Assembly (NCBI RefSeq): GCF_006345805.1
Contig: NC_043003.1
Span: forward strand, 116,622,001 to 116,686,000
Reading direction: 5' to 3'
DNA from: Octopus sinensis
Lineage: Eukaryota
Length of the DNA: 64,000 bases
The notes below the pieces were generated by a model. It worked only from the letters and a program-made list of their open reading frames with translations. It was not told where the DNA came from and ran no database searches. The translations under genes were made by a program, and so were the position numbers. Positions 1,942 to 6,910 of the stretch are shown in pieces (the stretch's first letter is position 1; every line of letters begins with the position of its first letter).

Positions 1942-1998
1942 ATAATAATAATAATAATAATAATAGTAATAGTAATAATAATAATAATAATAATTGTA

Positions 1999-2034
<36 letters not shown>

Positions 2035-2060
2035 TAATAATAATAATAATAATAATAATA
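1942..2060 (+). repeat. (AAT)n microsatellite flanking the first Dong/R4 copy
   Basis: Direct reading; slightly interrupted. Confidence 0.95.
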
Positions 2061-2905
2061 GCAGCTCAAGATCAATGCCTACCAACAAGAAACTACCAGG
2101 CCAACATATTAAAGATCAGAAGCAGTCCAACGTGTCGTGTATGCAAGCAACAAAATGAAACCATTGACCATGTGGTCTCCAAGTGCAGTCTTCTAGCGCC
2201 TACAGAGTATCTCAACAGGCACGATAGAGCTGCACCATATATTCACTGGGTAATCTGTAAAAACCTGGATTTGCCCCATGAAAAAACTGGTGGAACACAA
2301 ACCACCCCCAGTGCTTGAAAATGACCACATCTCACTCCTCTGGAACTTCACCATTCAAACTGACAGAAATATAGATGCAAATAGGCCAGACATCATATTG
2401 AAAGACTTCAAACAAAGAACATGCCTCCTCATTGATATGACTGTCCCAATCGATATAAACGTATCTGTCAAGACCTACCAAAAACTGAGCAAATATAAAG
2501 ATCTTGAAATAGAAATCAGCAAAATGTGGAAGCTGAAGACTAAAACAATACCTGTTGTCATAGGTGCCCTGGGAATGATAGCAAAAGGGGCTGATAGCTA
2601 CCTAACTCAGATACCAGGAAACACAAAAATGGCAGAAATTCAAAAGATAGTGCTCATGGGAACTGCTCATATCCTACGCAAAATACTTTCTATGTAATCT
2701 CAAGGTTTAAAACAAACATAATTTTCGGTTTAAAAAAAAAAAAAAAACTTTTTTTAGACGTTCATTAGTACAACACCCCCACCCCCCAAATATATGGCAC
2801 ACTAGGCATAACAACAACATGAACTTCCAACCCTGTTGTCTCTTGAGGTCTCTGGGTGAGACTTGGAGCCAACTTGTACAAATATAAAGCAAAAGTCAAA
2901 CATAG
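2061..2905 (+). mobile_element. 5'-truncated R4/Dong-type RLE non-LTR retrotransposon (family Dong-A): CCHC knuckle, restriction-like endonuclease, 3'UTR
   Basis: Translates AAQDQCLPTRNYQ..CRVCKQQNETIDHVVSKC..YLNRHD, frameshift near 2281-2293, then ANRPDII..LLIDMTVP..KLSKYKDL..PVVIGALG..ILRKILSM* (stop 2697); flanked by (AAT)n on both sides. Confidence 0.9.
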
Positions 2906-2940
2906 AATAATAATAATAATAATAATAATAATATAATAAT

Positions 2941-3247
2941 AAAAAGGGGCTGATTGCTACCTAACTCAGATACCAGGAAACACAAAAATGGCAGAAATTC
3001 AAAAGATAGTGCTCATGGGAACTGCTCATATCCTACGCAAAATACTTTCTATGTAATCTCAAGGTTTAAAACAAACATTTAAAAAAAAATTTTTTTTTAG
3101 ACATCTACTAGTACAACACAAAAAACAGCCAAATATATGGCACACTAGGCATAACAACAACGTGAACTTCCAACCTGTTGTCTCTTGAGGTCTCCGGGTG
3201 AGACTTGGAGCCCACTAGTACAAATATAAAGCAAAAGTCAAACATAG
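2941..3247 (+). mobile_element. Second, shorter 5'-truncated Dong-A copy
   Basis: Near-identical to ~2583-2905; same 3' end CAAACATAG followed by (AAT)n. Confidence 0.9.
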
Positions 3248-3289
3248 AATAATAATAATAATAATAATAAATAATAATATAATAATAAT

Positions 3290-3335
<46 letters not shown>

Positions 3336-3357
3336 CAATATAAAAATAACAATAATA

Positions 3358-3967
3358 ACACCTGTAGATATAAAGCAAGACATGAGAGAGTCGGCCAGTA
3401 TTTACACTGGAGAATAAGTCAGCATTATAAAATCAAAACCGGTGACAAATGGTATAAACACCATCCTGAAGCTGTGACTGAGGGAGAAAATGTGTCGATT
3501 CTATGGGACTTCCCCGTACATACCGACAAAAATATAAAAGCTAATATAGTGGATATTATTATAAAAGATCAGACAAAAAGGACGTGTTTATTACTTGACA
3601 TGAGTATTCCTTGCAATCACAATATAGCGCCGAAAGAATTTGACAAGATTAGTACCAGTGATTGTAGGATCTCTAGGAATGATAAAAAAAGGTACTGAAA
3701 CTTATTTGAAAATGATACCAGGCTTACCATCCCTACAGGAAGTGCAAAAAATCGTATTAACTGCAATGGCTCATGTACTGAGAAGAGCATTATCGCTGTG
3801 AAAACAACATCCATTCATGAATTTATTTATTTATTAATTTTTTAGATACAAATTTTACCTGTGAATTTGCCTGTGTAAAGTGGGAATGCATACAATGAGC
3901 TTCTCTGCCCTAGGTGTACGGAAAACACTCGGCGAAAAACGGAAGAAAATTTGAAGAAAGAAGGAAA

Positions 3968-3968
<1 letters not shown>
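3358..3968 (+). mobile_element. 5'-truncated R4/Dong-type element of a second family (Dong-B)
   Basis: YKARHERVGQYLHW..SILWDFPVHTDK..DIIIKD..LLLDMSIP..KEFDKIS, internal deletion, then VPVIVGSLG..AHVLRRALSL*; different 3'UTR; flanked by (AAT)n. Confidence 0.85.
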
Positions 3969-4028
<60 letters not shown>

Positions 4029-4079
4029 TTAATAATAATAATAATAATAATAGTAATAATAATAGTAATAGTAATAGTA

Positions 4080-4154
<75 letters not shown>

Positions 4155-4708
4155 GCCCTGATGCAGTACCAGGCAGTGGCTCTCATGGCTTCTGATCTTA
4201 ACTGATTGGGAGTGTTATCATGTACATTGTTTTGTCTTGGTATAAAAGATGGGCTACAGCAAATATTCTGCTCAATACCACAGATTTGCTTGTCAGTTGT
4301 TTGACCTTAACCAGTTGAGCATGTCCCTTAGTGGCTGACGATATGTGCATCTCTGATCACGAGCAGAAGTAGTGGGGGAGCATCATAGCCATGTGTTGAG
4401 AGGGATCCTTTGTGGTTTGAATGATCCACCTCTGGAAACATGGGTGGTTCTTTCAACATCCTTAAACAACCCTTATTCAGGGACCTTTTGAGCGGGATGG
4501 GCTACTCAACCTGAAGAAAATTCTAACTGGGCCCCACCTGCAAGGTCATGTGCTGTTTATCTTGATATGAGATCACCATGTCGCGCACATATGGTTGTGA
4601 TGCATGTGCCTGGTGTACCTTTATCAGACGAGTAGTCATGATGGGTATATTGGGCTTCGTATATTTTACCCCAGTGTCACTTTGATGGCATGCACTGCTC
4701 TCTCACTC
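4155..4708 (+). mobile_element. ~550-bp non-coding element between (AAT)n tracts, copy 1
   Basis: Starts GCCCTGATGCAGTACC, ends CTCTCTCACTC; four aligned copies. Strand inferred from neighbouring Dong copies. Confidence 0.85.
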
Positions 4709-4727
4709 AATAATAATAATAATAATA

Positions 4728-4759
<32 letters not shown>

Positions 4760-4778
4760 AATAATAATAATAATAATA

Positions 4779-4820
<42 letters not shown>

Positions 4821-5369
4821 GCCCTGATGCAGTATCCAGAAGAGGTTCTCATGGCTTCTGATCTTAACTGATTGAAGTGTTATCATGTACATTGTTTTGT
4901 CTTGGTATAAAAGATGGGTACAGCAAATATTCTGCTCAATACCACAGATTTGCTTGTCAGTTGTTTGACCTTAACCAGTTGAGCATGTCCCTTAGTGGCT
5001 GACGATATGTGCATCTCTGATCACGAGCAGAAGTAGTGGGGGAGCATCATAGCCATGTGTTGAGAGGGATTCTTTGGGGTTTGAATAATTCACCTCTGGA
5101 AACATGGGTGTTCTTTCAACATCCTAAACAACCCTTATTCAGGGACCTTTTGAGCGGATGGGCTACTCAACCTGAAGAAAATTCTAACTGGGCCCCACCT
5201 GCAAGGTCATGTGCTGTTTATCTTGATATGAGATCACCATGTCGCGCACATATGGTTGTGATGCATGTGCCTGGTGTACCTTTATCAGACGGGTAGTCAT
5301 GATGGGTATATTGGGCTTCGTATATTTTACCCCAGTGTCACTTTGATGGCATGCACTGCTCTCTCACTC
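4821..5369 (+). mobile_element. ~550-bp element, copy 2
   Basis: Same ends as copy 1; (AAT)n flanks. Confidence 0.85.
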
Positions 5370-5403
5370 AATATTAATAATAATAATCATTATAATAATA
5401 AAT

Positions 5404-5958
5404 ACCCTGATGCAGTACCAGACAGTGGCTCTCGTGGCTTCTGATCTTAACTGATTGGAAGTGTTATCATGTACATTGTTTTGTGTTGGCGTAAAAGATG
5501 GGCTACAATAAATATTCTGCCCAATACCACAGATTTGCTTGTCAGTTGTCTGACCTTAACCAGTTGACCATGTCCCTTAGTAGCTGACGATATGTGCATC
5601 TTTGACCATGAGCAAGAGTAGTGGGGGATTATCATAAACATATTTTGAGAGGGATTCTCTGGGGTTTGAATAATTCGCCTTTGGAAACATAGGTGTTTCG
5701 TTCAACATCCTTAAACAACCCTTATTCAGGGACATTTTGAACAGGATGGGTTACTCGACCAGAAATAAATTCTAACTGGGCCCCACCTGCAAGGTCATGC
5801 GCTGTTTATCTTGACATGAGATCACCATGTCGGGCACATATGGTTGTGATGCATGTGCCTAGTGTACCCTTATCAGAAAGGGTAGTCATGATGGGTATAC
5901 TGGGCTTCGTATATTTTACCCCAGTGTCACTTTGATGGCATGCCCTGCTCTCTCACTC
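5404..5958 (+). mobile_element. ~550-bp element, copy 3
   Basis: Same ends; more diverged than copies 1 and 2. Confidence 0.85.
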
Positions 5959-5992
5959 AATAATAATAATAGTAAAAATAATAATTAATAAC

Positions 5993-6068
<76 letters not shown>

Positions 6069-6910
6069 GCCCTGATGCAATACCAGGCAGTGGCTTTCAG
6101 GGCTTCTCATCTCAACTGATTGGAAGTGTTATCATGTACGTTGTTTAGTCTTGGTATAAAAGATGGACTGCAGCAAATACTACAGCTCAATACCACAGAT
6201 TTGCTTGTCAGTTGTTCGACATTAACCAGTTCACCATATCCCTTAGTGGCTGACGATATGTGCATCCTTGGTTACGAGTAAAGATATTGGGGGAGCATCA
6301 TAGCCATGTGTTGAGAGAAATTCTTTGGGGTTTGGATAATTCGCCTCTGGAATATGAGTGCTTCATTCAACTTTCTTAAAGAACCCTTATTCAGGGACCT
6401 TTTGGAGCAGAATGGGCTAATAAAGCTAAAGAAAATGTTAACTGGGTCCCACCTGCACTGTCATGTGCTATTTATCTTTATGTCTTTATTGCCCACAGGG
6501 GCTTAAACATAGAAGGGGGTAAACAAGGACAGACAAAAGGATTAAGTCGATTATAACGACCCCAGTGCGTAACTGGTACTTATTTAATCGACTCTGAAAG
6601 GATGAGAGGCAAAGTCGACCTGGGCAGAATTTGAACTTAGAACGTAACAACAGATGAAATGCCTATTTCTTTACTGCCCACAAGGGGCTACATACGTAGG
6701 GGACAAACAAAGACAGACAAACGGATAAAGTCGTTTATATCGACCCCAGTGCGTAACTGGTACTTATTTAATCGACCCCGAAAGGATGAAAGGCAAAGTT
6801 GAGCGTAGCGGCAGACGAAATACCGCTAAGCATTTCGCCCGGCGTGGTAAACTTGCTGCCAGCTTGCCGTCATGTGCTATTTATCTTGATATGAGACCAC
6901 CGCGTCCGCN
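6069..6910 (+). mobile_element. ~550-bp element, copy 4, interrupted by a SINE and ending at the assembly gap
   Basis: Same 5' end; most diverged copy; SINE C inserted at 6479-6868. Confidence 0.8.
6479..6868 (-). mobile_element. SINE family C, partial-dimer form, with 19-bp TSD
   Basis: TSD GTCATGTGCTATTTATCTT at 6460-6478 and 6869-6887; body duplicated as in the 20804 copy. Confidence 0.9.

What the first reader, a model, noticed from the sequence alone, without database searches (positions are those of the whole stretch)
1942..6910. (AAT)n 'landing pad' holding seven stacked, co-oriented site-specific retroelements
Seen: two Dong-A copies, one Dong-B copy and four 550-bp elements lie in series, each separated only by (AAT)n. 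Established: Dong-type R4-clade elements carry an RLE endonuclease and target TAA repeats. Inference: each insertion leaves usable target on both sides, so the locus grows as a self-perpetuating sink where several families share one microsatellite. The similarly long AAT tract at 29.6-29.9 kb is empty, suggesting clustering rather than uniform use.
Basis: partly seen in the sequence, partly recalled or inferred. Interest (0 to 1): 0.78.

Follow-up and report, generated by a model that had tools for sequence, protein, structure and literature searches.

The report
Stacked retroelements in an octopus microsatellite
One (AAT)n microsatellite in an octopus genome has been hit repeatedly by retroelements that insert only into TAA repeats: three dead Dong-type LINE tails and four copies of a short non-coding element. 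This is a clean but expected example of a known behaviour.

Summary
Between 1941 and 6909, seven same-strand repeat copies lie head to tail, each with (AAT)n at both ends. They are A1 (845 bp) and A2 (305 bp), B (609 bp), and four copies of a 555-bp non-coding element, E1-E4.

A1, A2 and B are severely 5'-truncated, broken 3' ends of two distinct RLE-type non-LTR retrotransposons. Each keeps part of a C-terminal zinc knuckle plus a restriction-like endonuclease. The closest proteins are from Octopus bimaculoides. Full-length relatives have RT but no APE, and resemble the solved R2 proteins. Dong targeting of (TAA)n is published, including in molluscs.

The stack reflects repeated independent insertions, not one segmental duplication. 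It holds three unrelated sequence families, A1 and A2 have different truncation points, and the E copies form a star tree with very unequal branches that rejects a clock. Only the E1/E2 pair (97% identical) could be a local duplication or a single template-jump event.

E behaves like a TAA-specific non-autonomous retroelement, but nothing links it to a Dong partner.

- Co-orientation is forced by the strand asymmetry of the target, so it adds no evidence.
- "Seven" is a lower bound, because E4 runs into a 100-N assembly gap.
- The "self-perpetuating sink" idea is plausible but cannot be tested from one window, and the two empty tracts are much less pure.

Verdict: a new member of a known kind, of modest interest.

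The parts
1941..2060 (+). T0: upstream (AAT)n tract, 120 bp, with AGT/TGT-interrupted units. It is the remaining 5' part of the target microsatellite.
2061..2905 (+). A1: a 5'-truncated Dong-like LINE 3' end. It covers the last ~210 aa of a ~1100-aa ORF: a CCHC knuckle at 2061-2315, one frameshift near 2275, and an RLE domain at 2278-2697 with RPD...D...K intact. A ~210-bp 3' UTR ends ...CATAG|AAT.
   Evidence: aligns to residues 925-1134 of P0017; 86% to O. bimaculoides A0A0L8FXY1
2906..2942 (+). T1: (AAT)n spacer, 37 bp
2943..3247 (+). A2: a second copy of the same family, truncated further. It keeps the last 37 aa plus the 3' UTR and is 89% identical to A1. Its 5' end is different and its 3' end is identical.
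3248..3358 (+). T2: (AAT)n spacer, 111 bp, degenerate in its last ~30 bp
3359..3967 (+). B: a 5'-truncated 3' end of a different Dong-like lineage, ~40% aa identical to family A with no nucleotide similarity. It covers the last ~160 aa. It is broken by stops and an internal deletion of ~14 codons, and the RLE 'RPD' reads 'IVD'.
3968..4152 (+). T3: (AAT)n spacer, 185 bp, with a perfect run of 22 units and a block of AGT-interrupted units
4153..4708 (+). E1: 556-bp non-coding element, young (5 private substitutions in 406 columns)
4709..4819 (+). T4: spacer (AAT)6(GAT)10(AAT)6 A (AAT)13
4820..5372 (+). E2: 553-bp copy, 97% identical to E1. Its private differences are six 1-nt deletions plus six substitutions packed into 12 nt near the 5' end.
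5373..5402 (+). T5: short degenerate AAT spacer, 30 bp
5403..5958 (+). E3: 556-bp copy of intermediate age (32 private substitutions in 406 columns)
5959..6066 (+). T6: (AAT)n spacer, 108 bp, with a perfect run of 24 units
6067..6909 (+). E4: the oldest copy (42 private substitutions). It is interrupted at 6480-6868 and cut off by the assembly gap at 6910.
6480..6868 (-). A later nested insertion: a dimeric SINE, antisense to E4, flanked by the 19-bp target-site duplication GTCATGTGCTATTTATCTT. It is not part of the TAA-specific set.
6910..7009 (.). Assembly gap of 100 N. The true right end of the array is unknown.

Best explanation
A (TAA)n/(AAT)n microsatellite in an Octopus genome has served repeatedly, over a long period, as the integration site for retroelements that insert by target-primed reverse transcription into TAA repeats.

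Shown here:
- Three of the copies are dead, heavily 5'-truncated 3' ends of two different Dong-like LINEs. These LINEs have a single ORF that ends in a CCHC knuckle and a PD-(D/E)xK restriction-like endonuclease.
- Four copies belong to a 555-bp non-coding element (E) with fixed 5' and 3' ends.
- All copies are directly flanked by AAT repeats and have the same polarity relative to the repeat strand.
- The E copies differ greatly in age. That fits at least three separate arrivals from a conserved source elsewhere in the genome.

Inferred:
- The endonuclease nicks the TTA strand. The (UAA)n-ended RNA is copied from that nick, which fixes orientation. Reverse transcription often aborts, which produces the 5' truncation.
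- Each insertion splits the tract but leaves TAA repeats on both sides, partly brought in with the element's own tail. The locus therefore remains a target and grows.
- E has no coding capacity and is most likely mobilised in trans by a Dong-type enzyme.
For: Anatomy and boundaries.

Coding remnants:
- tblastn places A1, A2 and B on the last 210, 37 and 160 residues of 1050-1200-aa proteins.
- Those proteins carry RVT_1 plus zf-RVT and no APE domain.
- Their best solved relatives are R2 proteins (E 5e-28).
- A profile of the C-terminal domain aligns RPD...iDv...KYkdLE to the RLE region of R2 structures (E 0.002).
- A1 hits zf-RVT (E 8e-6).

Host: the best hits are Octopus bimaculoides proteins at 86% and 82% identity.

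Independent insertion:
- A, B and E share no nucleotide similarity.
- A1 and A2 have different 5' truncation points and the same 3' end.
- E site patterns are private E4 42, E3 32, E2 6, E1 5, with 4 shared by E1+E2 and no conflicting splits.
- The relative-rate test of E3 against E1 with E4 as outgroup gives 32:9, p=4e-4.
- The spacers carry different interruption patterns.

E is a dispersed family: three further O. bimaculoides gene models match an E reading frame at 66-91%.

E is non-coding and predicted to fold better than shuffles (z = -3.4). It has no terminal inverted repeats.

Literature:
- A Dong element with a full-length ORF is present in the O. bimaculoides repeat library (PMC9115989).
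- Several target-specific families can share one array (Utopia in U2 arrays, PMC4640811).

An Exaiptasia relative is followed ~80 bp after its stop codon by ~150 bp of (AAT)/(GAT) repeats.
Against: - The RT region is absent from all three LINE fragments, so placement in the R4/Dong clade rather than another RLE clade rests on target, C-terminal architecture and literature, not on a phylogeny.
- E has no detectable similarity to the Dong-A or Dong-B 3' UTRs. It has no Rfam ribozyme, tRNA or 5S match and no hit to my own HDV-like descriptor. Its dependence on Dong is therefore circumstantial.
- The flanks of other E copies could not be inspected, because no octopus DNA is reachable with these tools.
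- Of three relatives from other phyla, only one shows a clear downstream TAA tract.
- E1 and E2 are equally old and 97% identical, so they may not be separate insertions.
- The region borders an assembly gap, and E2 shows an error-like pattern of 1-nt deletions.
Confidence: 0.75

Rival explanations
1. The array, or at least its E part, grew by local tandem duplication. Unequal crossing-over between the flanking AAT tracts copied element-plus-spacer units, rather than new retrotransposition events adding them.
For: The AAT tracts are ideal substrates for unequal exchange. E1 and E2 are 97% identical with equal private substitution counts (5 against 6) and 4 shared derived sites. All E copies have the same ends.
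Against: For the array as a whole:
- It holds three unrelated families.
- A1 and A2 have different truncation points.
- The E tree has no ultrametric rooting. E3 carries 32 private changes against 9 on the E1 lineage since their split (p=4e-4), and E4 carries 42 against 9 (p=3e-6). Copies evolving side by side should have equal counts.
- The spacers differ in length (30 to 185 bp) and in interruption pattern: AGT units in T3, (GAT)10 in T4.

For E1/E2 alone the duplication remains open. A single insertion event with an end-to-end template jump of the RT is an equally good alternative. R2 RT does this in vivo (PMC3414825).
Confidence: 0.1
2. E is not a retroelement. It is either a DNA transposon or MITE with a TAA/TTA target, such as the PIF/Harbinger type, or a long-period satellite whose spacer happens to be AAT.
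For: There is no RT link, no poly(A), no SINE head and no shared 3' end with the neighbouring LINEs. Four copies sit in tandem.
Against: - There are no terminal inverted repeats. The only inverted repeats are internal.
- All four copies have the polarity that the Dong fragments have relative to the AAT strand.
- Branch lengths are unequal and star-like.
- Related copies are annotated at three other O. bimaculoides loci, so it is not a locus-specific satellite.
Confidence: 0.08
3. Part of the structure is an assembly artefact. Near-identical E copies and long AAT runs were mis-joined or collapsed around the gap.
For: A 100-N gap ends the array. The private differences of E2 are six single-base deletions plus a dense 12-nt substitution cluster, which looks more like sequence error than neutral decay. 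Microsatellite-rich sequence is hard to assemble.
Against: The seven copies are all mutually distinguishable (81-97% identical) with distinct spacers. The older copies carry independent features, such as the nested SINE with a clean 19-bp duplication. An artefact would not create three different families, each abutting AAT.
Confidence: 0.07

Closest known systems
Dong / R4-clade non-LTR retrotransposons (Dong of Bombyx mori, DongAg, DongBg of the snail Biomphalaria glabrata)
   Same: - Single ORF ending in a CCHC knuckle and a restriction-like endonuclease
- No APE in full-length relatives
- Insertion into (TAA)n with the 3' end joined to the repeat
- Frequent 5' truncation
- Presence in molluscs and specifically in O. 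bimaculoides (PMC3812793, PMC7998251, PMC9115989)
   Different: Only the last 37-210 codons survive here, so the RT phylogeny, the N-terminal Myb-like domain and the 5' HDV-like ribozyme described for Dong (PMC3774820) cannot be examined. Two lineages only ~40% identical in protein sit in the same tract.
R2 SIDEs (short internally deleted elements) and other non-autonomous partners of RLE-type LINEs
   Same: E is short and non-coding, has defined ends, occupies the same specific target as the autonomous elements, and arrived repeatedly. The R2 SIDE precedent shows that such parasites of RLE LINEs exist (PMC3414825).
   Different: SIDEs are recognisable as the 5' ribozyme plus 3' UTR of their parent. 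E shows no similarity to the two Dong 3' UTRs available and no detectable ribozyme. Its parent, if any, is unknown.
Multi-family occupancy of repeated targets (R1/R2 in rDNA units; Utopia families in U2 snRNA gene arrays)
   Same: Several target-specific lineages are maintained in one array of target repeats, sometimes inserted in tandem (PMC4640811).
   Different: Here the target is a non-functional microsatellite whose every 3-bp unit is a potential site. Copies therefore stack at kilobase density, and nothing selects for keeping uninserted units.

Membership tests
R4/Dong clade LINE (A1, A2, B) | C-terminal PD-(D/E)xK restriction-like endonuclease | tested here: met
   A profile of the domain aligns to the RLE region of solved R2 proteins (E 0.002). 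P37, D38, D53, K69 and Y73 are conserved in 36 relatives. A1 keeps RPD...D...KY. In B the motif reads IVD, so it is degenerate.
R4/Dong clade LINE (A1, A2, B) | CCHC zinc knuckle between RT and endonuclease | tested here: met
   The A1 piece 2061-2315 hits zf-RVT at E 8e-6, 26.9 bits against a cut-off of 27.5. The same domain sits at the equivalent place in all full-length relatives.
R4/Dong clade LINE (A1, A2, B) | RT domain present, no APE endonuclease | tested here: inconclusive
   This is true of the full-length relatives P0017, P0053, P0027, P0074, P0105 and P0117. The window copies themselves lack everything upstream of the knuckle.
R4/Dong clade LINE (A1, A2, B) | RT phylogeny groups with R4/Dong rather than R2, NeSL, CRE or HERO | not testable with these tools
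   There is no RT sequence in the window and no named reference set available. RepeatMasker labels for octopus transcripts do include LINE/Dong-R4.
R4/Dong clade LINE (A1, A2, B) | Insertion in (TAA)n with the 3' end abutting the repeat | tested here: met
   All three copies end ...N|AATAAT and have AAT upstream. An Exaiptasia relative is likewise followed by AAT/GAT repeats.
Non-autonomous partner of an RLE LINE (E1-E4) | Short, non-coding, with the same 5' and 3' ends in all copies | tested here: met
   No conserved ORF and no Dong-like coding remnant. The ends are identical within 1-2 nt.
Non-autonomous partner of an RLE LINE (E1-E4) | Same target and polarity as the autonomous element; independent arrivals | tested here: met
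   AAT on both sides of every copy, on the same strand as the Dong fragments. The clock is rejected, giving at least 3 events. Other copies exist in O. bimaculoides, but their flanks were not seen.
Non-autonomous partner of an RLE LINE (E1-E4) | 3' end shared with the partner LINE | tested here: not met
   No similarity to the A or B 3' UTRs beyond chance 8-12-mers. Other octopus Dong families could not be tested.
Non-autonomous partner of an RLE LINE (E1-E4) | 5' self-cleaving (HDV-like) ribozyme, as in R2 SIDEs and in Dong | tested here: inconclusive
   There is no Rfam match even at E<=10. My own descriptor gave 0 hits in the four copies, against hits in 10% of shuffles. The descriptor was written from memory, and pseudoknotted ribozymes are easily missed.
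Classical SINE (E1-E4) | Pol III head derived from tRNA, 5S or 7SL | tested here: not met
   No tRNA was found by ARAGORN and there is no Rfam match. There is an internal TTTT run at about nt 78 of the element.
Tandem duplication / satellite | Units of equal age (ultrametric tree) and co-duplicated spacers | tested here: not met
   Relative-rate tests give 32:9 and 42:9. Spacers differ in length and in variants. The question stays open for the E1/E2 pair only.
MITE with TAA target (PIF/Harbinger type) | Terminal inverted repeats | tested here: not met
   Only two internal inverted repeats were found, none at the termini.

The most novel reading that the evidence does not exclude
E may be a previously undescribed kind of microsatellite-specific non-autonomous retroelement. 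It would hijack Dong-type enzymes without sharing their 3' UTR, being recognised only through its (UAA)n tail or its pairing with the nicked TTA strand. TAA tracts that have been hit once would then become preferred, growing landing pads through rich-get-richer dynamics. That would make a few microsatellites into long-lived retroelement graveyards.
Probability: 0.2. Interest if true: 0.5.

Novelty: new member of a known kind. Interest (0 to 1): 0.3.

Why it matters
The locus is a compact natural record of how target-specific LINEs use a microsatellite. It shows two Dong lineages and a non-coding passenger arriving at the same tract over a span of roughly 1% to 10% sequence divergence.

Suppose the E family proves to depend on Dong enzymes without sharing a 3' UTR with them. 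That would bear on how RLE-type reverse transcriptases choose their RNA template, which matters now that R2-type enzymes are being engineered for site-specific integration.

Suppose instead that genome-wide data show occupied tracts attract further insertions. That would be a simple mechanism for the growth of composite repeats in the very repeat-rich cephalopod genomes.

As it stands, the finding mainly confirms published behaviour.

Tried and rejected
1. Fetching other octopus copies to inspect their flanks. Exact-protein look-ups failed for the window ORF and for the O. bimaculoides hits. Exact-word scans for an invariant E word found nothing in metagenome contigs (23-mer) or viral contigs (19-mer), and the 19-mer gave only about the number of hits expected by chance in bacterial genomes (7 hits).
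2. A ribozyme at the E 5' end. Rfam at gathering and at E<=10 gave nothing, and a hand-written HDV-like descriptor gave nothing. The 'CTGATGC' near the 5' end is not a hammerhead core.
3. A tRNA or SINE origin for E. ARAGORN and Rfam were negative.
4. A conserved RNA structure in E. E1 folds better than shuffles (z = -3.4), but three copies give no compensatory pair. An apparent compensatory change in E1 at 4421/4437 did not survive local folding, so I dropped it.
5. The tract at 62 kb as the tail of a tRNA-like element. There is no tRNA match. It turned out to be a microsatellite inside another repeat.
6. Supplementary files of the octopus LINE paper. They hold no Dong consensus and no E sequence, only RepeatMasker labels.
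7. A chance estimate for the clustering. All 6-7 events in one of three tracts has p about 0.001-0.004 under equal use, and about 0.08-0.11 under a reinforcement urn. I do not rely on this, because the window was selected for the cluster and the tracts differ in purity.

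
Full report
**What is in the sequence.** The window is non-coding, microsatellite-rich animal DNA. Between 1941 and 6909, seven repeat copies lie on the + strand. Each is bounded on both sides by (AAT)n. In order they are T0 (1941-2060), A1 (2061-2905), T1, A2 (2943-3247), T2, B (3359-3967), T3, E1 (4153-4708), T4, E2 (4820-5372), T5, E3 (5403-5958), T6 and E4 (6067-6909).

Self-BLAST confirms that A2 is 89% identical to the 3' 323 bp of A1. It also shows that B is unique and that E1-E4 are 81-97% identical to one another. No other copy of any of the three families occurs in the 64 kb. 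A tblastn search with full-length relatives finds no other Dong-like coding remnant.

First, E4 is interrupted by an antisense dimeric SINE with a clean 19-bp target-site duplication, and it then runs into a 100-N assembly gap. The count of seven and the right boundary are therefore lower bounds. Second, some spacers are degenerate or carry other units. T4 contains (GAT)10 and T5 is only 30 bp long.

**What A1, A2 and B are.** I translated the pieces separately, without reading through the frameshift or the stops.
- A1 gives an 85-aa piece with a CCHC knuckle (Pfam zf-RVT, E 8e-6, just under the curated cut-off). It also gives an intact 139-aa ORF that runs to a stop codon.
- An exhaustive HMMER search with the 139-aa piece finds 8176 relatives. 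Many of them are the C-termini of 1050-1200-aa proteins.
- Those proteins contain RVT_1, then zf-RVT, then this domain, and no APE endonuclease.
- Their best solved relatives are R2 retrotransposon proteins (E 5e-28).
- A 36-sequence profile of the C-terminal domain aligns its nearly invariant RPD...iDv...KYkdLE positions to the restriction-like endonuclease region of R2 structures (E 0.002).

tblastn places A1 on the last ~210 residues of such proteins, A2 on the last ~37, and B on the last ~160. B has an internal deletion, stops and a degenerate 'IVD' in place of 'RPD'. A and B are only ~40% identical in protein and share no nucleotide similarity, even in the 3' UTR. They are therefore two lineages.

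The closest database proteins are Octopus bimaculoides gene models at 86% and 82% identity. The window therefore comes from that species or a close relative.

**Is it Dong?** Published work establishes three points:
- Dong elements target (TAA)n in a moth, a mosquito and the snail Biomphalaria (PMC3812793).
- A Dong element with a full-length ORF exists in the O. bimaculoides repeat library (PMC9115989). Octopus transcripts are RepeatMasked as LINE/Dong-R4.

The features I could test are met: the RLE, the knuckle, the absence of APE in relatives, and the 3' end joined to AAT. An Exaiptasia relative is also followed about 80 bp after its stop codon by ~150 bp of AAT/GAT repeats. Two other relatives gave weaker or no such signal. 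The defining RT phylogeny cannot be done, because the RT is missing from all three fragments. 'Dong-like, R4 clade' is thus well supported by target and architecture but not formally proven.

**What E is.** E is ~555 bp long. It has no conserved ORF and no Dong-like coding trace. It has no terminal inverted repeats. It has no tRNA, 5S or 7SL head and no Rfam match of any kind, even at E<=10.

All four copies begin at the same nucleotide, within 1-2 nt, directly after AAT repeats. The three complete ones end at the same ...CTCACTC|AAT. The RNA is predicted to fold better than shuffles (z = -3.4). Three copies give no covariation, however.

An E reading frame finds three small O. bimaculoides gene models at 66-91% identity. 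E is therefore a dispersed family, not a locus-specific repeat.

E shares nothing with the Dong-A or Dong-B 3' UTRs. I found no HDV-like ribozyme of the kind that B. mori Dong and R2 SIDEs carry at their 5' ends (PMC3774820, PMC3414825). My descriptor was home-made, so that negative is weak.

The best reading is a TAA-specific non-autonomous retroelement. The evidence for this is positional and phylogenetic, not mechanistic.

- Three unrelated families cannot come from one duplication.
- A1 and A2 share a 3' end but have different 5' truncation points, each fused directly to AAT. That is the signature of separate abortive reverse-transcription events.
- For E, the 406 ungapped four-way columns give private changes of 42 (E4), 32 (E3), 6 (E2) and 5 (E1). 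Four sites are shared by E1+E2 and there is no conflicting split.
- That is a near-star tree with very unequal branches, and no rooting makes it clock-like.
- Tajima-type tests give 32:9 for E3 against E1 (p=4e-4) and 42:9 for E4 against E1 (p=3e-6).

Copies duplicated in place would decay at the same rate. The short E1/E2 lineage must therefore have spent most of its history as a conserved source copy elsewhere. The spacers also differ in length and in their interruptions.

So there were at least six events: A1, A2, B, E4, E3 and E1/E2. They are spread over roughly 1% to 10% divergence. E1 and E2 are equally young. They may be two insertions, a local duplication, or one insertion with an end-to-end template jump, which R2-type enzymes are known to perform (PMC3414825).

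**What the interpretation over-reads.** Co-orientation is not an extra coincidence. TAA and TTA strands differ, so a nick-and-prime mechanism fixes polarity.

The contrast with the 'empty' tracts is weak evidence for clustering. The 29.6-kb tract is only 71% AAT and its longest perfect run is 7 units. The 62-kb tract has a longest run of 9 units. The locus, by contrast, has runs of 22-24 units. The 62-kb tract also lies inside another repeat, whose relative at 41 kb has only an A-rich spacer at that position.

A crude calculation favours reinforcement over equal use of three tracts. The window was chosen because of the cluster, so I give that calculation no weight. The sink idea is sensible, because each insertion leaves, and probably adds, TAA repeats. 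The locus now holds 702 bp of AAT, against 296 and 142 bp elsewhere. Testing the idea needs genome-wide counts.

**Caveats.** The array abuts an assembly gap. The private differences of E2 are six 1-nt deletions plus six substitutions within 12 nt. That pattern looks more like sequence error or 5'-end heterogeneity than neutral decay. I could not reach any other octopus DNA, so the target preference of E rests on four copies at one locus.

**Verdict.** The locus is a good example of known biology: Dong-type, TAA-specific LINEs stacking in a microsatellite. It also carries a possibly new non-autonomous passenger family. Novelty: a new member of a known kind. Interest: modest (0.3).

Noticed in passing
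window 6480-6868 (also 20806-21216, 39167-39353, 34415-34685, 51342-51500, 1249-1326): A dimeric SINE is inserted antisense into E4, flanked by a perfect 19-bp target-site duplication (GTCATGTGCTATTTATCTT at 6460-6478 and 6869-6887). The same family recurs across the window, once as a 183-bp tandem dimer.
   Followed up: partly
window 61941-62215 and 40955-41140: The 'empty' (AAT)n(AAG)n tract at 62 kb lies inside another repeat. A 73%-similar copy at 41 kb (minus strand) has the same flanks but only a ~45-nt A-rich spacer there, within a hairpin-like inverted repeat. The tract seems to be a microsatellite born inside that element.
   Followed up: partly
window 4820-5372 (E2), especially 4834-4846: All six private substitutions of E2 fall within 12 nt near its 5' end, and it has six single-base deletions elsewhere. 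This is an unusual pattern that suggests assembly error or 5'-end heterogeneity.
   Followed up: partly
protein P0211 (database hit, not in the window): A UniRef entry labelled 'Escherichia coli hypothetical protein' is 84% identical to the octopus Dong C-terminal domain. It is most likely cephalopod contamination in a bacterial assembly.
   Followed up: no
window 1960-2010 (T0), 4050-4085 (T3), 4727-4756 (T4): T0 and T3 both carry AGT-interrupted AAT units, which may be remnants of one ancestral tract split by A1, A2 and B. T4 carries a (GAT)10 block that is absent from the other spacers.
   Followed up: no
window 7010-7100 and 6910-7009: Directly after the 100-N gap the sequence resumes in an (AGA)n tract, not AAT. 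What lies between E4 and this tract is unknown.
   Followed up: no
window 8760-8835, 9381-9833 and 43127-43531: A tRNA-like SINE head is present, and a recurring repeat-derived ORF starting MFLLNKHSQ appears at two places. ARAGORN and Rfam call no tRNA gene anywhere in the window.
   Followed up: no
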